Positions 3,662 through 30,525 of a DNA stretch of 64,000 nucleotides are shown here, piece by piece. The stretch spans positions 62,001 to 126,000 of the IMG/VR virus record IMGVR_UViG_3300005289_000016. One strand, 5' to 3'. Both the position numbers and the translations under genes were made by a program. How positions within the stretch are numbered: position 1 is the first letter of the stretch; every line of letters begins with the position of its first letter. Below the pieces are notes generated by a model that was not told the origin of the DNA, searched no databases, and was given only the letters and a program-made list of their open reading frames with translations.

Positions 3662-5227
3662 GTGCAGATTCAGCTTAATGAACTGTCGAGTAAGGGAATC
3701 ACATCCCTGACTCTGGATCACCGCGGCAATTCAATGAAGTTGTCAGCAGGCAGCTATCATTCCGCTGCGATCATCAACCGTGAAACACTGTTCAAGGAGA
3801 CCAATGACTTCCTCTCAAGCCTGCCGGCGGAGGATCAAGCCAAGCTTTGGGACTTGTATCTCAAGGTAAACGAGTACCTTTCGTCCGAAGAGATCCGGTC
3901 GTCGTACTTCATCCGCGCTGAAATTGAAGCGGTGGTGAAGCAGATGTACAAGATCATCACTTGGCCGGTGGTACGGGATTGGGTTGAGAAAGCCCGTCTG
4001 GAAATCCCAAGCGACGTCAATGAGAAGTTCGAAGAGTACAACGAGCGCGGTCGTAACTACCGCAGTCGGACGTACATCAAGTCGGACTACATCGACCTGC
4101 AAGCGTTGGCACTGGGGTTGCGGATGATTGTGCCTGTATGGGGCATGTACATCCAGAACGTGGCGTCCACCCACGGCAACGGGTACAAGGAATCGGAAGC
4201 TGTCAAGCTGATCGAGCTGGCTGGTGTGAACCAGTGGCCTCCTTATGTCCGCATGATGGAGTACATCGAGGCATCGGTGGACAAAGAGATCAGCATGACC
4301 ATGGTCATGGCCGGTCTGTCGAGTGAAGAAGTACCACGTCACTTGATGGCTATGGCATTGGTGCGCAAGATCTCCATCGGGCCGTTGTCCACTCCGGTGG
4401 ATCGGGACAGTCTGGCCCGGATTCTGTTCAACTACGTGACTGGCACTCACCTGCGCATGGACGGTCGCTTCCAAAGCGTCACCGGCGTAGTGCAGGCTAA
4501 ACGGTCCCGCAGTCTGGACAAAGGCGACGAAGACAACAGCTCGGTCTGGGACGACTACGGTCAAACCACCGAGATCACCGAAGGCGACCGGCAATTGCTG
4601 GAAGTGTTCAGTGAGAACACCAACGTCATCGTCGTACGTGCTGACCCAACTCTGGACATTGCTCGTGTGCAGCAATGCGTCGCCATCTGTTCTCGTCACG
4701 AAGAGCGCAAGGTGGAAGACTTCCAGAAGGCGATCATCTTCTGGGTTATCCGGACGATCTCGCCAGAAGCACGTGAGCTGCTGCTCAAGCGGACTGAGTT
4801 CCGTTTGATGGGTGTCGCTCAGGCAATCCTGGATCACTGGGGTTTCCACGAGCTGGCCATCCTGGTATCGGCGGAAGAGTACGTCAGCGATGAAGGTGAG
4901 ACCTACATCCCGACTGAAACCCGCAACAAGATCACCAAGCAGCAAGCAGAGGTATTGGACAAACAGTACCCGCACTGGCGCCAGGAAACGAAACGTCAGG
5001 AACCGGGCAAGCGTGGCAACGTAGCCGTGACTGCGATCGACATGGTCGTGGACTGGATGAGTGGCCGTGCTTGGAAACCACACGCACCTCGAGACATCAT
5101 TGAACGTGTGCCGATGCTTAATCAGACCGGCTACATGTACATCTCGGGCGACATCAGACGTCAACTAGCAGACATGATCATTCATGTCAACAACACTATC
5201 GGGAGCCGTACCCATGCAACTAATTGA
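3662..5227 (+). CDS. Non-virion RNA polymerase promoter-specificity (sigma-like) subunit, phiKZ gp68-like
   Basis: 521 aa, GTG start with GAGG RBS; size and position in the gp65-gp75 core block. Confidence 0.7.
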   Translation: MQIQLNELSSKGITSLTLDHRGNSMKLSAGSYHSAAIINRETLFKETNDFLSSLPAEDQAKLWDLYLKVNEYLSSEEIRSSYFIRAEIEAVVKQMYKIITWPVVRDWVEKARLEIPSDVNEKFEEYNERGRNYRSRTYIKSDYIDLQALALGLRMIVPVWGMYIQNVASTHGNGYKESEAVKLIELAGVNQWPPYVRMMEYIEASVDKEISMTMVMAGLSSEEVPRHLMAMALVRKISIGPLSTPVDRDSLARILFNYVTGTHLRMDGRFQSVTGVVQAKRSRSLDKGDEDNSSVWDDYGQTTEITEGDRQLLEVFSENTNVIVVRADPTLDIARVQQCVAICSRHEERKVEDFQKAIIFWVIRTISPEARELLLKRTEFRLMGVAQAILDHWGFHELAILVSAEEYVSDEGETYIPTETRNKITKQQAEVLDKQYPHWRQETKRQEPGKRGNVAVTAIDMVVDWMSGRAWKPHAPRDIIERVPMLNQTGYMYISGDIRRQLADMIIHVNNTIGSRTHATN

Positions 5228-6710
5228 TCTCGTATTCCGTGAGCGTTCGGGCTACAAGGACATGCAGCTCCGTCCTTATTACGCCGATGCCACCAAAGAT
5301 TTGATCGGTGAGTTGGACCGCGATACCCGTGGTGGTGATGACCTGACTCCTGCGGCCCTGAGCCGTGTGGCAGGCCGTATCATCCGCCCGGCCGCCCAGC
5401 ACCAAGGCGCAGCTATTATCGCCAACGGCTGGGGCGAGAAGCGGTTCATGTTCATGATGACCGTTCTGGTCCGCAAGAGCCGTACCGACATCCGGACCCT
5501 GGAGATCTCCGGTTATACCGACTACGTGGGTGCTTCCCAAGGCATCCGTGGCGTCAAGCTTGATGAGAACATGGCGCTGTACTTCAACTCGGTCACAGAG
5601 CTGAACCAGAGCTACATGGATACCCCGACCCGTCGCGGTTGGCAGACCCAGATCGCCAGTTCGAACCACCTGATTGCGCCTCAAGTCATGCCGGACTTCA
5701 GCCGTGATCGGATGTCCGCCGGGACACTGGTAATGCGTCCAGAAGACGTGTTCCACAATAACCCGAAGAACGTGGTGTCTAACGCGTTCAACCGCCGTGC
5801 CGAGAAAGAGAACTACCTGGACATGCGCCATGGGTTCACCGGCAAAGGCCTGCGGATGTCCAACCGCCTCAATGACTCGTCCACTCGTTACTTGCACCGC
5901 TCGATCAAAGCGCTGGCAACTGCAAACGAAGGCGAAGTGTTTGGCCAAGGCAATGCGTTCGACCGGGACACCGGCTCGATCCTGAAGGATGCCCGTTCTC
6001 AGGTCCGTGAGAAGACCGTGAGCAGCATCCCAGTCCTGGCTGACATTGCTCGTGAGACCAACATCCTCGAGCAAGGCTTCATCACCTACGGTGAGCTGAT
6101 CGCCATGAACCCGGACTATGTCTGGGACGACGTCAAGGTGTTCTTCGAGCGCCCTGAGACTGTGGACACCTTCCACAACCGTTCTGGTTGGTCGGGTCGT
6201 GACAACAGTACCATCGCTGCGATCCAAGTGGTTCGTGCGTTGCCAGCGTTCATGGCGTTCCACCACATTGCGTACGTCGAATTCACGGCGGACAACATGT
6301 CGGCATTGGGTGAGCCAGTCATCATCATCCCGCAGTGCCTCCCGATCATTGGCAAGCAGATCACCGATCGCTCGCTGATGGCATTCGAAGAGCGCATGGT
6401 CACTGAGCTGTTCTACGACATGCTCCCGTGGCCAGACTGCATGTTTGAGATCGAAGTCCGTGCCGGTCTGGCCAACGACATCGTGATCAAGCTCAAGCTG
6501 GAAGGCGAAGATCCGTTCGAGGACACCTTCCCAGTCTTCTGTGACTCCTTGGTACCACCGGTCATTGTGAATGATCAGGACACCATCGGAGCCATGAGTT
6601 CCTCGCTGACCGACATCGTCGAAAGCCTGGGTGCTGGCCGTCGTGGCCGGGACGATCCAGACTACGCCGATGCACCGGTCCTCAGCAACAGCGGCAATTT
6701 CAATTTCTAA
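5214..6710 (+). CDS. picA: PicA/Imp1-like phage-nucleus protein import factor (phiKZ gp69 position)
   Basis: About 500 aa, directly after the gp68-like gene; ATG 5214 follows GGGAG; N-terminal IANGWGEKRFMFMM segment. Assignment is mainly by synteny. Confidence 0.65.
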   Translation: MQLIDLVFRERSGYKDMQLRPYYADATKDLIGELDRDTRGGDDLTPAALSRVAGRIIRPAAQHQGAAIIANGWGEKRFMFMMTVLVRKSRTDIRTLEISGYTDYVGASQGIRGVKLDENMALYFNSVTELNQSYMDTPTRRGWQTQIASSNHLIAPQVMPDFSRDRMSAGTLVMRPEDVFHNNPKNVVSNAFNRRAEKENYLDMRHGFTGKGLRMSNRLNDSSTRYLHRSIKALATANEGEVFGQGNAFDRDTGSILKDARSQVREKTVSSIPVLADIARETNILEQGFITYGELIAMNPDYVWDDVKVFFERPETVDTFHNRSGWSGRDNSTIAAIQVVRALPAFMAFHHIAYVEFTADNMSALGEPVIIIPQCLPIIGKQITDRSLMAFEERMVTELFYDMLPWPDCMFEIEVRAGLANDIVIKLKLEGEDPFEDTFPVFCDSLVPPVIVNDQDTIGAMSSSLTDIVESLGAGRRGRDDPDYADAPVLSNSGNFNF

Positions 6711-8171: not shown

Positions 8172-8207
8172 AGAGAGGAGGCCACCACGGCCTCCCCTCT
8201 TTCTTTT
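8172..8207. terminator. Bidirectional terminator between convergent genes
   Basis: AGAG-GAGGCC/GGCCTC-CCCTCT stem plus TTTCTTTT. Confidence 0.7.
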
Positions 8208-14698: not shown

Positions 14699-14763
14699 TA
14701 TGCCGCCTGTCAAAGAAAATGAACTCTGTCTATTATCTGAACGCACCACACCGAGACCTCACC

Positions 14764-25756: not shown

Positions 25757-26218
25757 ATGTCATTAACGATCGTGGAACAAGACCTGTTTGACGTCCCTGC
25801 CGACACCCGTGTGATCACGATCAATCTGGTCGGGGCAATGGGAGCCGGTGTGGCTCGAACTGCCCGTAACACGGTCCCAGGGCTTCACAAGCACTATCGC
25901 AAGATGTACCCAACGATTGAGCCAGGGAACATCATCACGTATAAACACGAAGACATGCGTTACCTGCTGGTGCCTACCAAACTGGACTGGAGAGATTCTT
26001 CTCCACGGAGTCTGGTGATTCATCACATCAACAAGTTAGCCGTCTTGGCCAGCCGGCACAGACTCGGACGCATTGTCTTACCACCATTAGGTTGCGGTCA
26101 TGGCGGGTTGAGTTGGGAAGACGATATTCAGTACGTCTACCGGGCTCTCTATCCGTTCATTGAAGCAGACATCACAGTCGCTCTAGGCGACAGCAGGAGA
26201 AAGAATGGAAGGTCCTAA
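25757..26218 (+). CDS. Macrodomain protein, DarG/Poa1p-like ADP-ribosylhydrolase
   Basis: INLVGAMGAGVA, LVPTKLDWR and LPPLGCGHGGLSW match the DarG-type macro motifs. Confidence 0.8.
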   Translation: MSLTIVEQDLFDVPADTRVITINLVGAMGAGVARTARNTVPGLHKHYRKMYPTIEPGNIITYKHEDMRYLLVPTKLDWRDSSPRSLVIHHINKLAVLASRHRLGRIVLPPLGCGHGGLSWEDDIQYVYRALYPFIEADITVALGDSRRKNGRS

Positions 26219-27568: not shown

Positions 27569-27683
27569 GAAACACCGGTGGTGGCACATCGCCGGTACTT
27601 TTAGGGGGTCTGTAGAAGGCCTATTCTAGCCTGCTCCGAGACTAGCGTACCCGTCCGCAACATGGCTCGGCTATGAGACCCCC
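27569..27683 (+). ncRNA. Candidate structured leader or small RNA
   Basis: TATG at 27566; ACCGGTG/CGCCGGT hairpin; GGGGGTCT/AGACCCCC stem enclosing TAGAA/TTCTA and CCGAG/CTCGG stems. Confidence 0.45.
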
Positions 27684-27714
27684 GCCTATTTCAATAACCG
27701 GTAAGGAACTACCG

Positions 27715-28578
27715 ATGCAACTGAATTCTTTCTACACTGGCAGCAAAGTGGTTGGCGCTATCCCAATGTCTCACGACGATTTCTGTCGTTACGTTGGCCG
27801 TGATATCGACCCAGAAGCACTGGACCTCACTGGTTATCTGGTGGAGTACCTGGACGGCGGCAAAGCCAACCACCCGGGCCACGTTGGTTACATCAGCTGG
27901 TCTCCTTCCGAAGTGTTCGAGAAGAACTACATCAGCATCGGTGACATTACCGGCCTAGCGCCGTTCATCATCCGCTTGAAGGCTGAGCGGGCTGAGAACT
28001 ACGACCGCCTCCAGAAGCTGCGTAGCTTCCTGGACATCCAGGACGAGAAGACTCGTGACGAACCTCGTACTGACGAGCGTCAAGCGTTCCTCGACAAGAT
28101 CCCGACCCTGGACATCCAGCATCTGGCCCTGCAACAAGAGCAACTGCGCCTGATGCAAGGTCTGGAAGAAGTTCTGACCCAGCGCTTGGAATTACTGGTA
28201 CCAGAAGCCCGTGTCGAGCACAAAGCCTCGATCCGTTTCTCGGTAGCCAACGGCACTCGCTTCGACATCATGCCACGCGTCTTCAAAGCGCTGGAAGGTC
28301 AGATCGACGCCTGCTGCTACACCGGCACCATCTACAACATCCCGGTCAACTCCATCAAGGTCTTCGGCCAGAATGGCGATCAACTCGATGACGCTACTGT
28401 GCGTGTTGAGAAGATGGTTCGTGGTTTCGGCATCTCTGGCGACATCGGTGAAGAACTGTTGTTCGACATCGGCATGGACGTCCAGCGCGGCATCACTCAC
28501 GTGACCAGCTCGTTCTCGGAAGACTTCCAGATCGAGATCGAAGTACAACTGGCCGACATCAATCGTCGTCTGGTGTAA
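27715..28578 (+). CDS. Phage protein with N-terminal YLVEYLDGGKANHPGHVGYISWSP domain and coiled coil
   Basis: AAGGA RBS before ATG 27715; the N-terminal motif is common in uncharacterised phage proteins. Confidence 0.7.
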   Translation: MQLNSFYTGSKVVGAIPMSHDDFCRYVGRDIDPEALDLTGYLVEYLDGGKANHPGHVGYISWSPSEVFEKNYISIGDITGLAPFIIRLKAERAENYDRLQKLRSFLDIQDEKTRDEPRTDERQAFLDKIPTLDIQHLALQQEQLRLMQGLEEVLTQRLELLVPEARVEHKASIRFSVANGTRFDIMPRVFKALEGQIDACCYTGTIYNIPVNSIKVFGQNGDQLDDATVRVEKMVRGFGISGDIGEELLFDIGMDVQRGITHVTSSFSEDFQIEIEVQLADINRRLV

Positions 28579-28592
28579 CACCCTCCTGCATA

Positions 28593-28615
28593 GCGCCGTG
28601 CTTAGTGCACGGCGT
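28593..28615. terminator. Hairpin flanked by CATA/TATG
   Basis: GCGCCGTGC-TTAGT-GCACGGCGT, then TTATGCCCC. Confidence 0.6.
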
Positions 28616-28685
28616 TTATGCCCCGTCTTTCAACTAAGTCCTTGTATTCGTGTAAAAAAATACACGATGGTTATAGTCTATGTGA

Positions 28686-28737
28686 AGTGCCCTTGTCCCT
28701 TGACTTTCGGTCGTAAGCGGAAAACGTCCTGGGCACT
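28686..28737 (+). ncRNA. Candidate three-way-junction RNA at the start of the non-coding island
   Basis: AGTGCCC/GGGCACT closing stem, GAC-TTTCG-GTC hairpin; TATG at 28679 just upstream. Confidence 0.45.
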
Positions 28738-28745
28738 GAAGCGTT

Positions 28746-28853
28746 TGAGAAAGGGCCTGGCCGCCTGCGGCCGTGATCCGTGCAGCCTTTGAGCAAGCAG
28801 AGGGATCGGCAGCCTTGTGCAGCCACTTGCCGCCGGCGCTGGGCCCTTTCTCA
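28746..28853 (+). ncRNA. Candidate 108-nt structured RNA with a long terminal stem
   Basis: Perfect 12-bp TGAGAAAGGGCC/GGCCCTTTCTCA, internal GGCCG/CGGCC and GATCC/GGATC stems, three GCAGCC copies. Confidence 0.55.
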
Positions 28854-28861
28854 TCCTATCC

Positions 28862-28950
28862 GGAGAGATTTCTGAGCGGTCAAAAGAATCAGACTGTAAA
28901 TCTGACGTGCGTAGCGCACTTCGTAGGTTCGAATCCTTCTCTCTCCACCA
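28862..28950 (+). tRNA. tRNA-Tyr(GUA)
   Basis: GGAGAGA/TCTCTCC acceptor, TCAGA-CTGTAAA-TCTGA anticodon arm, long variable arm, GGTTCGAATCC, encoded ACCA. Confidence 0.95.
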
Positions 28951-28957
28951 TTTCAAT

Positions 28958-29013
28958 GACGGTCGCAGCAATGCGAGGTTGACCCCGCACTGAATCAACA
29001 GTGCCTGTCGCCA
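28958..29013 (+). ncRNA. 56-nt tRNA-like mini RNA ending in GCCA
   Basis: GACGG/CTGTC terminal stem plus GCCA; TCGCA/TGCGA and GCACTG/CAGTGC hairpins; no T-loop consensus. Confidence 0.55.
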
Positions 29014-29015
29014 TA

Positions 29016-29092
29016 GGTTCTATAGCTCAGTTGGTTAGAGCACCGGCCTGTCACGCCGGGGGTCAGGGGTTCAAGTCCCCTTAGAGCCGCCA
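29016..29092 (+). tRNA. tRNA-Asp(GUC)
   Basis: GGTTCTA/TAGAGCC acceptor, CCGGC-CTGTCAC-GCCGG, GGTTCAAGTCC, GCCA. Confidence 0.95.
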
Positions 29093-29097
29093 CATTT

Positions 29098-29176
29098 AGG
29101 GGTGTAGCCAAGTCTGGCCTAAGGCAACAGGTTTTGATCCTGTCATTCTCTGGTTCGAATCCAGATGCCCCTTCCA
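29098..29176 (+). tRNA. tRNA-Gln(UUG)
   Basis: AGGGGTG/TGCCCCT acceptor, ACAGG-TTTTGAT-CCTGT, GGTTCGAATCC, TCCA. Confidence 0.93.
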
Positions 29177-29185
29177 TGTTGTATA

Positions 29186-29287
29186 GTTCACTGCCCATTG
29201 GCCGCATAGTCCCGCAAGCCCCTTCAAGGCGAAGCGAATGGGACTGGCAGCGCAGGGGTTCTGGGTACAGCCCAGCAGTGAACGCCA
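29186..29287 (+). ncRNA. 102-nt tRNA-like RNA with an 8-bp acceptor stem and GCCA end
   Basis: GTTCACTG/CAGTGAAC plus GCCA; CTGGG/CCCAG arm stacked on it; central arm AGTCCC/GGGACT ending in GCC-CCTTCAA-GGC. Confidence 0.6.
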
Positions 29288-29288
29288 T

Positions 29289-29364
29289 TCCGCGATAGCT
29301 CAGTTGGTAGAGCATACGGCTGTTAACCGTAGTGTCCCTGGTTCGAGTCCAGGTCGTGGAGCCA
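29289..29364 (+). tRNA. tRNA-Asn(GUU)
   Basis: TCCGCGA/TCGTGGA acceptor, TACGG-CTGTTAA-CCGTA, GGTTCGAGTCC, GCCA. Confidence 0.95.
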
Positions 29365-29367
29365 TAC

Positions 29368-29550
29368 GCGCTCGAAAGAGCCAAACAGTAAGGTTGGTTA
29401 AATTCCGACACGCTGACCGTGGGCAGTTGCGAAGGGAGTGCGGTTCGATCCCGCATGATAAGTCTCAGAGGCAATAACCTCTGAGTAACTCTGGTGAGAC
29501 AAATGGTCAGGCCGACCCGGCCTTTAAACGCACTGGCGTAATCCAGTCGA
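29368..29550 (+). ncRNA. Candidate multibranch ncRNA containing T-arm modules
   Basis: GCTC-GAAA-GAGC; GTTGG-TTAAATT-CCGAC; TGCGG-TTCGATC-CCGCA; CTCAGAGG/CCTCTGAG; long-range CTGACCGT/ATGGTCAG. Confidence 0.55.
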
Positions 29551-29563
29551 GGGGTGGAGATAT

Positions 29564-29674
29564 AGTCCTGTAGCTCAGTTGGTTAGAGCGCTGCCTTTTC
29601 AGGCCGGACCCTTCGGGGTCGTCGGCCTAACAGACACGGCGGAGGTCGGTAGTTCGAATCTACCTAGGACGACC
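29564..29674 (+). tRNA. Atypical tRNA (Glu-UUC-like) with a 35-nt insertion in the anticodon loop; functional status unknown
   Basis: Intact D arm TAGCTCAGTTGGTTAGAGC, anticodon stem CTGCC/GGCGG, AGGTC, T arm GGTAG-TTCGAAT-CTACC. The 42-nt loop holds a cUUCGg hairpin; 6-bp acceptor pairing; no CCA. Confidence 0.75.
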
Positions 29675-29680
29675 CTTTCA

Positions 29681-29735
29681 ATCAGCGGCATTCATGCGCG
29701 GCGCGCATGGTGTACTCGGACGAGGTCCCGCTGGT
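29681..29735 (+). ncRNA. Candidate small structured RNA
   Basis: ATCAGCGG/CCGCTGGT stem enclosing CATGCGC/GCGCATG and GGAC/GTCC hairpins. Confidence 0.4.
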
Positions 29736-29750
29736 TGGATTCAGTTAGAC

Positions 29751-29902
29751 GATGATATAGCTCAGTGGTAGAGCGGTGAGGGTAAAGACGAGACTCGGGT
29801 TCGATTCCCGGAGGACTGTGCTAGAACACAGGCCTTAGCTCAGTGGTAGAGCGCGGTCGTGCACCTTGCAGGCGTCGGTTTGATTCCGGCTATCGTCGCA
29901 CC
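29751..29902 (+). ncRNA. Twin, strand-swapped tRNA-like RNA with two D arms and two T arms
   Basis: Two identical TAGCTCAGTGGTAGAGCG D arms, two T arms, outer 7-bp GATGATA/TATCGTC acceptor, inner loop-capped AGGACTG/CAGGCCT acceptor. Confidence 0.7.
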
Positions 29903-29904
29903 TA

Positions 29905-30050
29905 CACGTCTCATGGGTGTGCACGCCCAGTGAGCTGACTCTACTCGAGGTCCGTCTGAGTAGATGTCAGAGTGTTACCTGATGGACTGCTGTACGATCT
30001 GGCTCATGCCAGCCGCAGCATGTGACTCGACCGAACAGTGGTCGACAAAG
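29905..30050 (+). ncRNA. Candidate multi-hairpin RNA at the end of the island
   Basis: CTCA-TGGGTG/CGCCCA-G-TGAG; CTGAC-TCTACTC/GAGTAGA-T-GTCAG; CTGGC/GCCAG; TCGACC/GGTCGA. Confidence 0.45.
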
Positions 30051-30141
30051 CCTCTAGCTTGCTCGCTTGTCTTTTAAGGCAGGCGGGCAGTTATGCCGTT
30101 TCACTATCGCTTGGGGAAGCGATCCAACTAGGGAGCGTTAC

Positions 30142-30525
30142 ATGCACTACTATCTGTTTCATCCATCGATCCACGGTGCGTACGATGATAGCCCTGAACT
30201 GCTGAAGTGGTTCATGGGCATCGGGAAGTCGTACAGCCATGCTTTAGAAGTGGGGGCTGCAAAGGTCAAGCAACTAGAGAACCATGAAAGCGACAGCGAC
30301 ATGATGGCGTTGGTCAATGGGTTCACTGTTACCCAGATCGACCAAGTCCATGCCCGCGTCGTCGAGAAGGTCATTGCGTTGTTTGGCCATGATCTACGGA
30401 CAGCAGAACCTAATGCGAAGGCTTCGCTGTCAATGATCACCCTGCTGCTTAACCGTGGCCGGTACGATGTGATCGATCAGATCATCGGCGGTACACCGAT
30501 ATCTGCCACAGAGTTCAGTGCATGA
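30142..30525 (+). CDS. Hypothetical protein
   Basis: GGGAG RBS before ATG 30142; ends at a hairpin. Confidence 0.65.
   Translation: MHYYLFHPSIHGAYDDSPELLKWFMGIGKSYSHALEVGAAKVKQLENHESDSDMMALVNGFTVTQIDQVHARVVEKVIALFGHDLRTAEPNAKASLSMITLLLNRGRYDVIDQIIGGTPISATEFSA

What the first reader, a model, noticed from the sequence alone, without database searches (positions are those of the whole stretch)
28680..30060. A 1.4-kb island of tRNA-mimic RNAs interleaved with real tRNAs: candidate decoy-RNA system
Seen: four canonical tRNAs (Tyr, Asp, Gln, Asn) alternate with at least eight structured non-coding segments, leaving almost no unstructured spacer. Two segments end in a tRNA-style GCCA (29013, 29287). 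Two are clearly tRNA-derived but abnormal (29564, 29751), and one carries free-standing T arms (29368-29550). An A-tract plus TATG (28654-28682) sits just before the first stem. Established: TATG marks phiKZ late start sites, and phage tRNAs can counter host anticodon nucleases and tRNA-sensing defences. Inference: one precursor is cut by the host tRNA-maturation enzymes into real tRNAs plus acceptor- or elbow-mimicking RNAs. These could titrate tRNA-targeting toxins or nucleases, or tRNA-binding factors.
Basis: partly seen in the sequence, partly recalled or inferred. Interest (0 to 1): 0.9.

Follow-up and report, generated by a model that had tools for sequence, protein, structure and literature searches.

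The report
Phage tRNA operon with tRNA-mimic RNAs
A giant Pseudomonas phage has a 1.4-kb stretch with no protein genes, in which four normal tRNAs alternate with about nine folded RNAs conserved in related phages, several built from tRNA parts; what they do is unknown, and the idea that they act as decoys is untested.

Summary
The window comes from a 276-kb phiKZ-like jumbo phage of the pPa_SNUABM_DT01 clade. Positions 28,682-30,090 look like one non-coding transcription unit. It is bounded by two copies of a phage-wide "GC hairpin + TATGCC" signal and preceded by a conserved A-tract/TATG promoter-like site.

It holds tRNA-Tyr, Asp, Gln and Asn plus nine or ten structured modules. Folding of the window sequence alone barely beats chance (z -0.3 to -3.2). 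Eight related phage loci settle the matter. Every module shared with a relative keeps its helices through compensatory changes; for example, the 3' module has 22 of 57 pairs with double changes, against 1-4 in slid controls.

Several modules are tRNA-derived:
- two closed stems that end in CCA 1-2 nt before the next tRNA;
- a tRNA with a 35-nt hairpin insert after anticodon-loop position 37;
- a 147-nt RNA in which two tRNA bodies share one long anticodon-like helix.

None reaches an Rfam threshold except as tRNA. The closest precedent is the phage T4 tRNA precursor, which also yields RNAs C and D of unknown function.

The decoy function is untested.

The parts
28590..28620 (+). GC hairpin followed by TATG(CC): the generic punctuation signal that ends the upstream gene
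   Evidence: The same hairpin + (Y)TATGCC motif recurs at 14699, 30092, 39825, 51088, 57307 and 60849 on the + strand and at 8172 on the - strand.
28649..28682 (+). Promoter-like site: palindrome CGTGTAAAAAAATACACG, then TATG with the predicted start at G28682
   Evidence: Unique in the window. Conserved in L027, L003, L004, L005 and L060. Resembles the phiKZ middle (AAanTTACc near -24) and late (TATG, +1 = G) promoter elements (PMC4666361).
28682..28742 (+). Module A: 5' leader hairpin
   Evidence: Alifold on 5 sequences. The outer stem GUGCCC/GGGCAC becomes AGCCU/AGGCU in relatives.
28746..28853 (+). Module B: long closing stem enclosing branched hairpins with GCAGCC motifs
   Evidence: Modules A and B together have 53 predicted pairs, 15 with double changes, though the alignment is messy. 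A B-like stem with compensations is also seen in DT01.
28862..28950 (+). tRNA-Tyr (GUA), CCA encoded
   Evidence: 55 bits.
28957..29013 (+). Module C: three-way junction. Closing stem UGACGG/CUGUCG, GCAA-capped hairpin, 6-bp hairpin stacked on the closing stem, then 3' CCA at 29011-29013, 2 nt before tRNA-Asp
   Evidence: Alifold on window, L027 and L060 gives 19 pairs, 4 with double changes. The closing stem is GGCGG/CUGCC in L060 and CCA is kept in all three. Single-sequence z = -2.3.
29016..29092 (+). tRNA-Asp (GUC), CCA encoded
   Evidence: 72 bits.
29098..29176 (+). tRNA-Gln (UUG), CCA encoded
   Evidence: 53 bits.
29186..29287 (+). Module D: 8-bp closing stem GUUCACUG/CAGUGAAC, a long arm, a hairpin stacked on the 3' strand, then G-CCA (29284-29287) 1 nt before tRNA-Asn. 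The 5' end resembles a type I-F CRISPR repeat
   Evidence: 36 pairs, 99.3% paired, 6 with double changes against 0 in all slid controls. Match to the I-F repeat scores 12 in the window (15 of 200 null sequences reach it) and 15 in L003 (0 of 200).
29289..29364 (+). tRNA-Asn (GUU), CCA encoded
   Evidence: 67 bits. 100% identical in five relatives.
29365..29410 (+). Stretch with no homologous structure in any relative; contains a small hairpin and a T-arm-like hairpin (29394-29410, loop UUAAAUU)
   Evidence: Its only BLAST match is the window itself. z = -0.3 for 29365-29427. Not supported as a conserved structure.
29411..29553 (+). Module S4b: multi-branched RNA with a canonical T-arm hairpin (29440-29456) and three further hairpins
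   Evidence: Window against L060: 43 pairs, 10 with double changes.
29564..29672 (+). Module F: tRNA scaffold with a 42-nt anticodon loop. It reads UUUUCA (29596-29601), a hairpin (29602-29627), then the tail UAACAGACAC (29628-29637)
   Evidence: Rfam tRNA 50 bits. Conserved in L027/L004 and L003/L005. The insert hairpin differs in sequence but keeps its pairing (5 double changes; 6 of 500 shuffles reach this). The 5' half is 81% identical to tRNA-Asp.
29678..29738 (+). Module G: 11-bp closing stem with two hairpins (Y shape), starting 6 nt after F
   Evidence: 24 pairs, 3 with double changes. Consensus fold -31.9 on the + strand against -20.9 on the reverse complement.
29751..29898 (+). Module X: nested double-tRNA RNA. 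Parts in order: 7-bp acceptor-like stem (29751-57 with 29891-97), D arm 1 (29758-75), a ~12-bp helix, T arm 1, a capped stem, D arm 2 (29836-53), T arm 2 (29874-90)
   Evidence: Alifold on window, L029 and L060: 47 pairs, 96.5% paired, 11 with double changes against 0-2 in slid controls. Covariance model R1 gives full-length hits only in these three loci (162-190 bits); ordinary tRNAs score about 30.
29905..30046 (+). Module I core: closing helix CACR/YGUG, five hairpins, and conserved unpaired stretches (GAGUGUUACC-GAUGGAC)
   Evidence: Present in all 8 relatives. The whole alignment (including the terminal hairpin) has 57 pairs, 97.4% paired, 22 with double changes against 10.3 +/- 2.0 in shuffles (0 of 500 reach it) and 1-4 in slid controls.
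30060..30095 (+). 13-bp GC hairpin (30060-30089) plus TATG (30092-30095): predicted end of the island transcript and start signal for the gene at 30142
   Evidence: Same motif class as the other hairpin + TATGCC sites. z = -3.2. The 16-mer GCGGGCAGTTATGCCG is invariant in the window and in every related locus except L060.

Best explanation
**What it is.** The region is a dedicated non-coding operon of a phiKZ-like jumbo phage. It would be transcribed by the phage RNA polymerase from the A-tract/TATG site near 28682 to the hairpin at 30060-30089.

**What it yields.** The precursor carries four ordinary tRNAs (Tyr, Asp, Gln, Asn) interleaved with conserved structured RNAs. At least four of these are built from tRNA parts:
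- C and D are closed stems ending in CCA.
- F is a tRNA body with a foreign hairpin in its anticodon loop.
- X is two tRNA bodies fused through a shared anticodon-like helix. Its inner D-loop/T-loop 'elbow' is invariant.

**Proposed mechanism (inferred).** RNase P cuts at each tRNA 5' end. That cut also creates the 3' ends of C and D, 1-2 nt after their CCA. Host 3' exonucleases trim back to CCA. The acceptor-like stems of F and X make them substrates of the same enzymes. The tRNA-like folds then make the products stable small RNAs.

**Proposed function (inferred).** Their most likely role is to occupy proteins or RNAs that recognise the tRNA acceptor end or elbow during infection. The tRNA part would serve as processing and stability scaffold, and the inserted parts as the payload.

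**Shown versus inferred.** Shown: conservation of the structures, their strand, and the tRNA-derived architecture. Inferred: the single transcript, the processing, the stability, and any action in trans.
For: **Structure and strand.**
- Compensatory changes support every shared module.
- All consensus folds are better on the tRNA strand than on its complement, and roughly 7-16% of paired cells are G-U.

**No competing signals.**
- No Rfam family other than tRNA reaches threshold.
- No sigma-70 promoter, intrinsic terminator or TATG lies inside 28683-30091 on the + strand.

**Transcription boundaries.**
- The promoter-like site is conserved and phiKZ-like.
- The closest cultured relative encodes phiKZ-type virion and non-virion RNA polymerases (PMC8541153).
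- In phage 201phi2-1 a tRNA is transcribed from a middle promoter, and a small RNA lies immediately upstream of a tRNA (PMC11512511).

**tRNA mimicry.**
- CCA directly abuts the next tRNA in C and D and is conserved.
- The inner T arm 1 and D arm 2 of X are almost invariant in three phages whose neighbouring protein is only about 48% identical.

**Precedent.**
- The T4 tRNA cluster is a ~1.75-kb primary transcript that yields eight tRNAs plus species I and II RNAs (RNAC, RNAD) of unknown role (PMC2330249, PMC3014915).
- A tRNA-like Y RNA domain is cut by RNase P and receives CCA (PMC4201824).
Against: - There are no expression or end-mapping data for this phage or any relative.
- The comparison set is small: 9 genomes, 2-8 sequences per module.
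- Modules come and go between close relatives. S4b and X are absent from L027 and the L003-L005 group. D and F are absent from L060 and DT01. X is replaced by tRNA-His in L027 and L003. So no single module is essential.
- The outer elbow of X is degenerate: D loop 1 has GA instead of GG in two of three sequences, and T loop 2 varies.
- F and X lack an encoded CCA.
- Thermodynamic signal from single sequences is weak.
- Neighbouring genes give no RNA-related clue.
Confidence: 0.55

Rival explanations
1. The structured segments act only in cis. They would keep neighbouring tRNAs from misfolding, position RNase E, RNase P or exonuclease cuts, or protect the precursor, and would then be degraded without a function of their own.
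For: They sit exactly between tRNAs. The AU-rich linker UUUCAAU follows both tRNA-Tyr and F. Module content is fluid between relatives while the tRNAs are nearly invariant. In 201phi2-1 a leader-derived small RNA lies upstream of a tRNA.
Against: Insulators would not need conserved CCA ends, an invariant inner elbow in X, or long conserved unpaired stretches as in module I. In relatives many tRNAs abut each other with 4-9 nt spacers and no insulator.
Confidence: 0.2
2. The segments are decaying tRNA pseudogenes and recombination scars with no function.
For: F's 5' half is 81% identical to tRNA-Asp. X looks like two tandem tRNAs that lost their anticodon arms. phiKZ carries a truncated tRNA-Asn half, and Noxifer an unannotated odd tRNA-like gene. 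The distribution of modules is mosaic.
Against: Helices are maintained by double substitutions across phages whose flanking protein is 42-54% identical. Slid-partner controls give 0-4 double changes against 6-22 observed. The X closing stem pairs the 5' end of 'tRNA 1' with the 3' end of 'tRNA 2' and covaries at three positions.
Confidence: 0.07
3. Module I (29905-30089) is a cis-regulatory leader, a riboswitch- or attenuator-like element. It would control read-through from the island into the conserved downstream gene at 30142.
For: It is present in all relatives, always at the 3' end of the island and upstream of the same gene family. It ends in a strong hairpin and has conserved unpaired nucleotides typical of ligand- or protein-binding RNAs.
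Against: The terminal hairpin + TATGCC is a generic signal found at at least seven other sites in the window, so the downstream gene probably has its own start. In L029 another ORF lies between module I and that gene. No Rfam riboswitch matches.
Confidence: 0.15
4. Module D carries an RNA anti-CRISPR (Racr). This would be a solitary mimic of the Pseudomonas type I-F CRISPR repeat that binds Cas6f.
For: L003 and L005 read GTTCACTGCC-CATT-GGCAGCT. The P. aeruginosa I-F repeat is GTTCACTGCCGTATAGGCAGCTAAGAAA (PMC9854967). The alignment score is 15, and 0 of 200 null sequences reach it. Racrs are known in phages (PMC10651486).
Against: - In the window the hairpin is broken (GGCCG; U-C mismatch), and the score of 12 is reached by 15 of 200 null sequences.
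- The 5' flank GUUCACUG pairs with the 3' end of D, with a U-A to C-G covariation. That fold excludes the Cas6f hairpin.
- The 3' handle is not repeat-like.
- None of these contigs appears in the Racr paper's supplementary files.
- The similar string TTCACTGCCA is simply the acceptor end of tRNA-Ser in L060.
Confidence: 0.05
5. Some modules are self-cleaving ribozymes that release the tRNAs, like the HDV-like ribozymes reported beside phage tRNAs (that report is cited from memory).
For: They lie directly next to tRNA ends and have compact multi-helix folds.
Against: No ribozyme family appears even at E <= 10 with permissive filters. No hammerhead core is present: CUGAUGG in the window is CGGAUGG in relatives. 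The predicted folds are simple junctions without the nested pseudoknots of HDV-like ribozymes.
Confidence: 0.04

Closest known systems
Bacteriophage T4 species I and II RNAs (RNAC, RNAD) in the T4 tRNA gene cluster
   Same: They are small non-tRNA RNAs encoded among phage tRNA genes. They are made from the same ~1.75-kb primary transcript as eight tRNAs, and their role is unknown (PMC2330249, PMC3014915).
   Different: T4 has two such RNAs. Here at least nine modules outnumber the tRNAs. No sequence relationship was tested because no T4 sequence was fetched. The nested double-tRNA and the insert-bearing tRNA architectures are not, to my knowledge, described for T4.
YrlA / bacterial Y RNA tRNA-like domain (Rfam RF02553)
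   Same: The inner part of X has the YrlA order: T arm, capped acceptor-like stem, D arm, with the anticodon-stem position leading out of the domain. [quoted passage not shown]
   Different: The score is 23 bits against a threshold of 69, the same level as any adjacent tRNA pair (32 bits for His-Asp of phage D6). X has no Ro60-binding helix. The outgoing helix ends in a second tRNA body instead.
ROOL and GOLLD ornate RNAs
   Same: They are large structured RNAs of unknown function in phages and prophages, often near tRNA islands. GOLLD sometimes has tRNAs within its linker (10.1101/2024.12.08.627333).
   Different: No Rfam match. Here there are many small independent modules of 55-150 nt that shuffle between relatives, not one 600-800-nt RNA.
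Phage tRNAs as counter-defence against anticodon nucleases
   Same: The canonical tRNAs here fit the idea that phage tRNAs replace host tRNAs cut by defence nucleases (PMC10264068). Asn, Asp, Tyr and, in relatives, His form the GUN set.
   Different: That model concerns functional tRNAs. It says nothing about non-decoding mimics such as C, D, F and X.
RNA anti-CRISPRs (Racr)
   Same: They are phage-encoded small RNAs that mimic a host RNA to titrate a defence protein (PMC10651486). D's 5' end resembles the I-F repeat.
   Different: See the rival explanation on Racr: the hairpin is broken in the window and covariation supports a competing fold.
Engineered tRNA scaffolds for expressing recombinant RNA (from memory: Ponchon and Dardel 2007)
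   Same: F and X have the same design: a foreign structure inserted at the anticodon of a tRNA body, which in E. coli confers correct processing and stability.
   Different: Those are artificial constructs. Natural phage examples of this design are not known to me.

Membership tests
Canonical tRNA (RF00005) | Score at or above the Rfam gathering threshold with a full cloverleaf | tested here: met
   Tyr, Asp, Gln and Asn score 53-72 bits. F scores 50 bits over model positions 1-71.
Canonical tRNA (RF00005) | 7-nt anticodon loop able to decode (applied to F) | tested here: not met
   The F loop is 42 nt (29596-29637), with a conserved hairpin inserted after position 37. U33, UUC and A37 are present in the window, but L003 reads UCA at the same place.
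Canonical tRNA (RF00005) | Threshold score (applied to the two halves of X) | tested here: not met
   24.0 and 22.2 bits against a threshold of 29. Only the D and T arms match and there is no anticodon arm.
Intron-containing tRNA (group I or bulge-helix-bulge type) | A self-splicing group I core, or a bulge-helix-bulge motif at the exon-intron junctions | tested here: not met
   The insert is 35 nt, with no Rfam intron hit at E <= 10. By inspection the intron 3' part (UAACAGACA) cannot pair with the anticodon region to form the central 4-bp helix.
YrlA Y RNA (RF02553) | Rfam gathering score (69 bits) over the whole model | tested here: not met
   23.1 bits, model positions 28-81 only. L060 and L029 copies score 27.1 and 24.7. 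Adjacent ordinary tRNA pairs score 24.6-32.1.
YrlA Y RNA (RF02553) | Order T arm - capped stem - D arm forming a tRNA-like domain | tested here: met
   The inner part of X has this order, supported by covariation.
YrlA Y RNA (RF02553) | Ro60-binding helix and a neighbouring Ro60 (TROVE) gene | tested here: inconclusive
   X has no such helix. Its ends form an acceptor-like stem. Ten neighbouring ORFs have no TROVE domain, but the rest of the 276-kb genome was not searched.
RNA anti-CRISPR, type I-F | Repeat-like sequence with an intact Cas6f hairpin CUGCC/GGCAG and the base pair at the foot of the stem | tested here: not met
   The window has GGCCG (a U-C mismatch). The hairpin is intact in L003, L004, L005 and L027.
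RNA anti-CRISPR, type I-F | Hairpin free to form (solitary repeat unit) | tested here: not met
   The same nucleotides form the covarying closing stem of D.
T4-type tRNA-operon small RNAs | Encoded among tRNA genes on the same strand with no intervening promoter or terminator | tested here: met
   This covers consensus scans and TATG only; the phage's own signals are incompletely known.
T4-type tRNA-operon small RNAs | Accumulate as discrete stable RNAs processed from the tRNA precursor | not testable with these tools
   No transcriptome data for this clade are held.
ROOL / GOLLD / tmRNA / known ribozymes and riboswitches | Match to the family covariance model | tested here: not met
   No such hits at the gathering threshold in the window, and none at E <= 10 in 28500-30200. 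ARAGORN finds no tmRNA.

The most novel reading that the evidence does not exclude
The island is an RNA-based counter-defence or host-takeover cassette. Its tRNA mimics would be released by the host's own tRNA-processing enzymes. They would then bind and neutralise factors that recognise the tRNA elbow or CCA end, such as tRNA-cleaving or tRNA-modifying immune effectors. The candidates are X, with an invariant elbow held on a second tRNA body; C and D, with CCA ends; and F, with an anticodon-loop payload. X would be a natural 'two-tRNA' RNA able to bridge two tRNA-binding sites.
Probability: 0.15. Interest if true: 0.9.

Novelty: new variant of a known kind. Interest (0 to 1): 0.6.

Why it matters
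Phage tRNA clusters are usually read as lists of tRNAs. Here most of the cluster is something else: covarying RNAs that no database family describes.

- **A long-open question.** The old T4 puzzle of what the extra RNAs in a phage tRNA operon do could be addressed in a system with many modules and natural presence/absence variants.
- **New RNA designs.** The double-tRNA RNA X and the insert-bearing tRNA F look like natural versions of the 'tRNA scaffold' trick. They are defined targets for structure determination and pull-downs.
- **Possible new counter-defence.** If any of them binds a tRNA-directed defence protein, that would add RNA mimicry of tRNA to the known phage counter-defences.
- **A practical point.** Annotation pipelines miss all of this. 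The published DT01 genome reports only two tRNAs in the homologous region and calls a CDS inside it.

Tried and rejected
- **Rfam searches.** I ran them at the gathering threshold and at E <= 10 on the region, on relatives and on other jumbo-phage tRNA islands. Only tRNA reached threshold. The weak YrlA, sX4, mascRNA, tmRNA-fragment and plastid UTR hits are all explained by tRNA arms.
- **YrlA membership.** Rejected, because adjacent ordinary tRNAs score as well or better.
- **Search for more relatives.**
  - Megablast and blastn against GenBank phages found only DT01.
  - Protein-anchored scans of IMG/VR and of metagenomes gave six further loci.
  - Three DNA-motif scans of IMG/VR added one relative, L060; all other hits were chance matches.
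  - The single genome-contig scan returned only chance matches in unrelated taxa.
- **CRISPR-repeat reading of D.** Followed with the literature and a null model, then downgraded.
- **Type I-E repeat similarity.** None.
- **Intron reading of the F insert.** Rejected: too small for group I and no bulge-helix-bulge motif.
- **Protein-coding reading.**
  - ORFs in the region overlap tRNAs or are not conserved.
  - Alignments carry 1- and 2-nt indels.
- **Neighbouring genes.** Ten ORFs were scanned against Pfam. Only a sub-threshold Macro domain and a crAss001_48-related domain appeared, nothing RNA-related.
- **Single-sequence folding.** z-scores are uninformative on their own.


Full report
**Source and setting.** The window is identical to IMG/VR contig IMGVR_UViG_3300005289_000016 (276,032 bp). 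Its only GenBank relative is Pseudomonas aeruginosa jumbo phage pPa_SNUABM_DT01, at about 77% nucleotide identity over 42% of a 20-kb query. That phage encodes phiKZ-type virion and non-virion RNA polymerases. Its paper reports only two tRNAs and no non-coding RNA (PMC8541153). The finding lies between ORF 27673-28578 and ORF 30142-30525, both on the + strand. No conserved ORF lies between them.

**Checking the observation.** ARAGORN and Rfam find tRNA-Tyr(GUA), Asp(GUC), Gln(UUG) and Asn(GUU) at the stated places, all with encoded CCA.
- Rfam also calls 29564-29672 a tRNA (50 bits) with about 37 nt unaligned inside the anticodon loop.
- At a permissive threshold it gives two partial tRNA hits (29758-29811 and 29836-29890; 24 and 22 bits) that cover only D and T arms.
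- GCCA sits at 29010-13 and 29284-87, 2 and 1 nt before the next tRNA.
- The A-tract + TATG at 28654-28682 is unique in the window.
- Folding each inter-tRNA segment alone gives z-scores of only -0.3 to -3.2 against dinucleotide shuffles. 'Structured' therefore cannot be established from this sequence by itself.

**Relatives.** Eight related loci were obtained by four routes:
- protein-anchored scans of IMG/VR: L003, L004, L005;
- a protein-anchored scan of metagenomes: L027, L028 (partial) and L029;
- a motif scan of IMG/VR: L060;
- GenBank: DT01, held as L001.

The downstream protein is 42-54% identical between the window and the DT01, L003, L004 and L005 loci, about 48% for L029, and 91% for L027. 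All other motif hits in IMG/VR and in 185,579 prokaryotic genomes were chance matches. The clade is small and the modules are restricted to it at the sequence level.

**The island is modular**. Its order in the window is: promoter-like site, A, B, Tyr, C, Asp, Gln, D, Asn, a stretch with no homologous structure in relatives, S4b, F, G, X, I, terminal hairpin. Relatives keep the ends (A and B; I) and the tRNAs but swap the middle:
- C occurs in the window, L027 and L060.
- D, F and G occur in the window, L027, L003, L004 and L005; G also in L028, which holds only the 3' part of F.
- S4b occurs in the window and L060.
- X occurs in the window, L060 and L029, and is replaced by tRNA-His in L027 and L003.
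- Other loci carry extra modules (E, H, J), small ORFs, or tRNA-Ser.

**Comparative structure.**
- *Module I* (8 sequences): 57 pairs, 97.4% of cells paired. 22 pairs have changes on both sides, against 10.3 +/- 2.0 in column shuffles (0 of 500 reach the observed value) and 1-4 when partners are slid by 1-3 columns.
- *X* (3 sequences): 47 pairs, 11 with double changes, against 0-2 slid.
- *D* (4 distinct sequences): 36 pairs, 6 double, against 0 slid.
- *F* (3 distinct sequences): 32 pairs, 5 double, four of them in the inserted hairpin.
- *S4b* (2 sequences): 43 pairs, 10 double.
- *C*: 19 pairs, 4 double.
- *G*: 24 pairs, 3 double.
- *A+B*: 53 pairs, 15 double, on a poorer alignment.

Consensus folds are always more stable on the tRNA strand than on the complement. 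For example, X gives -52.6 against -38.0, and G gives -31.9 against -20.9. Roughly 7-16% of paired cells are G-U. This points to RNA on the + strand rather than a DNA feature. The sample is small and related, so the shuffle counts are not probabilities. The slid-partner contrast is nonetheless large throughout.

**What the modules look like.**
- *C* (28957-29013) is a three-way junction. Its 5-6-bp closing stem stacks on a 6-bp hairpin and is followed by CCA. The closing stem changes from GACGG/CUGUC to GGCGG/CUGCC in L060 while CCA stays.
- *D* (29186-29287) has an 8-bp closing stem with a hairpin stacked on its 3' strand, then G-CCA. CCA is present in three of four distinct relatives.
- *F* is a full cloverleaf. 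Its anticodon loop reads UUUUCA, then a 26-nt hairpin, then UAACAGACAC. U33, a UUC 'anticodon' and A37 are in place, and the insert begins exactly after position 37. The hairpin sequence differs completely between relatives but stays paired, and the single-stranded tail is conserved. The insert is too small for a group I intron and shows no bulge-helix-bulge motif. I read F as a tRNA scaffold carrying a payload, not as a decoding tRNA. Its 5' half is 81% identical to the neighbouring tRNA-Asp, which suggests origin by duplication.
- *X* (29751-29898) is the most unusual. A 7-bp acceptor-like stem (GAUGAUA/UAUCGUC) covaries as GACGUUA/UAACGUC in L029 and GACGUCA/UGACGUC in L060. It closes, in order: D arm 1; a roughly 12-bp helix (GGUGAGGGUA.. 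with ..UGCACCUUGC); T arm 1; a capped stem; D arm 2; the return strand of the long helix; and T arm 2. Topologically this is two tRNA bodies joined through a common anticodon-like helix. The outer body has open ends. The inner body has its acceptor closed by a loop.
  - The inner T arm and D arm (canonical UUCGAUU and GG loops) are almost invariant in all three phages.
  - The outer elbow is degenerate.
  - A covariance model of X finds full-length matches only in these three loci (162-190 bits); ordinary tRNAs score about 30 bits.

**Transcription signals.** The site before module A combines an A-rich element (AAAAATACAC, centred about 21 nt upstream) with TATG. phiKZ middle promoters have AAanTTACc near -24, and late promoters have TATG with the G as start (PMC4666361). 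In 201phi2-1 a tRNA is expressed from a middle promoter, and a leader-derived small RNA lies just upstream of a tRNA (PMC11512511).

Scanning the window for strong hairpins directly followed by TATG revealed a recurrent signal, GC hairpin + (Y)TATGCC. It occurs at 14699, 28617, 30092, 39825, 51088, 57307 and 60849 on the + strand and at 8172 on the - strand. Two of these bracket the island. The terminal hairpin of module I (30060-30089) is therefore a generic terminator/restart signal, which also explains the near-invariant 16-mer GCGGGCAGTTATGCCG. Between 28683 and 30091 there is no TATG, no sigma-70-like promoter and no intrinsic terminator on the + strand.

**Comparison with known families.**
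- Nothing but tRNA reaches an Rfam threshold.
- The YrlA (Y RNA-like) hit to X reflects the T arm - capped stem - D arm order, which is the YrlA tRNA-like domain layout (PMC4201824). It scores 23-27 bits against a threshold of 69, and adjacent ordinary tRNAs score 25-32 bits. X is not a YrlA, and it lacks a Ro60-binding helix.
- The closest functional precedent is T4. There a ~1.75-kb transcript yields eight tRNAs plus species I and II RNAs (RNAC, RNAD), whose roles remain unknown (PMC2330249, PMC3014915).
- ROOL and GOLLD RNAs show that ornate RNAs of unknown function cluster with phage tRNA islands, but there is no similarity to them here.

**A side lead.** The 5' end of D resembles the P. 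aeruginosa type I-F CRISPR repeat (sequence from PMC9854967).
- In L003 and L005 the match, GTTCACTGCC-CATT-GGCAGCT, beats all 200 null sequences.
- In the window it does not (15 of 200 null sequences reach it), and the hairpin carries a mismatch.
- The same nucleotides form D's covarying closing stem.
- I rate an RNA anti-CRISPR role as unlikely for the window and unresolved for the L003-type copies.

**Interpretation.** What is shown: a non-coding, single-strand-specific set of conserved RNA structures interleaved with tRNAs, several of them tRNA-derived chimeras. What is inferred: one precursor, release by RNase P and 3' trimming, stability, and action in trans on tRNA-recognising factors. 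The pseudogene reading is disfavoured by the covariation. A purely cis-acting processing role is the main rival.

**Limits.**
- There are nine genomes and no expression data.
- S4b rests on two sequences, and C and X on three each.
- Alignments of A and B are uncertain.
- The phage's own promoter and terminator rules are extrapolated from phiKZ.

Noticed in passing
window 14699, 28617, 30092, 39825, 51088, 57307, 60849 (+) and 8172 (-): A recurrent intergenic signal: a strong GC-rich hairpin followed immediately by (Y)TATGCC. It is probably a combined terminator and late-type (TATG) start signal of this phage. Several of the + strand sites (for example 39825, 57307, 60849) also have a hairpin + TATG on the opposite strand nearby.
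   Followed up: partly
window 29186-29205; L003/L005 2925-2944: The 5' end of module D resembles the P. aeruginosa type I-F CRISPR repeat. The Cas6f-type hairpin is intact in L003, L004, L005 and L027 and mismatched in the window. It competes with D's covarying closing stem.
   Followed up: yes
window 28862-29364 and relatives; L266, L267, L268: The tRNA sets of this clade and of other Pseudomonas jumbo phages are built around the GUN anticodon family: Asn, Asp, Tyr, His. Gln (and Lys in Noxifer) is added, so they read NAN codons. From memory, the GUN family carries queuosine and is the target set of colicin E5-type anticodon nucleases. This fits a counter-defence role for the real tRNAs.
   Followed up: no
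L003/L005 3106-3220 versus window 29596-29601: At the anticodon position of the insert-bearing tRNA, the window, L004 and L027 read UUC (Glu-like), but L003 and L005 read UCA (complementary to the UGA stop codon).
   Followed up: no
window 27673-28578: Residues ~6-175 of the upstream ORF are similar (tblastn) to phage proteins annotated DUF2829, one of them labelled anti-CRISPR. Pfam finds only a crAss001_48-related domain at residues 97-173. This is possible, but weak, anti-defence context.
   Followed up: partly
window 25757-26218: An ORF with a Macro-domain match just below the Pfam cutoff (21 bits against 22). The DT01 paper also notes Macro, NADAR and NUDIX genes in that phage.
   Followed up: no
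L267 (Noxifer) 4483-4578 and 4154-4365: Noxifer has an unannotated tRNA-like gene after tRNA-Asn. It has an acceptor stem + GCCA, a D arm, a 23-nt anticodon loop and an atypical T loop. Noxifer also has a 212-nt unannotated spacer between tRNA-Asp and tRNA-Asn. Insert-bearing tRNA-like genes may be common in Pseudomonas jumbo phages.
   Followed up: partly
L266 (phiKZ) 6205-6337: In phiKZ a truncated tRNA-Asn 5' half, running up to the anticodon, lies directly upstream of an 89-nt tRNA annotated Asn that has a long extra arm.
   Followed up: no
L001 (DT01) 2681-2914: The GenBank CDS PA10_00181 ('hypothetical protein') lies inside the DT01 version of the non-coding island, in a segment unique to DT01. 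A T-arm-bearing tRNA-like element follows at 2922-2985.
   Followed up: no
L003 3370-3510, L004 3375-3512, L060 4655-4790 (- strand): Module H is absent from the window. Its roughly 10-bp closing stem is completely different in sequence between L003 (CAGUGAAGC/GGCUUCACUG) and L060 (CUGUAGGGC/GCCCUACAG). It is followed by a U run and sits next to small ORFs inside the island.
   Followed up: no
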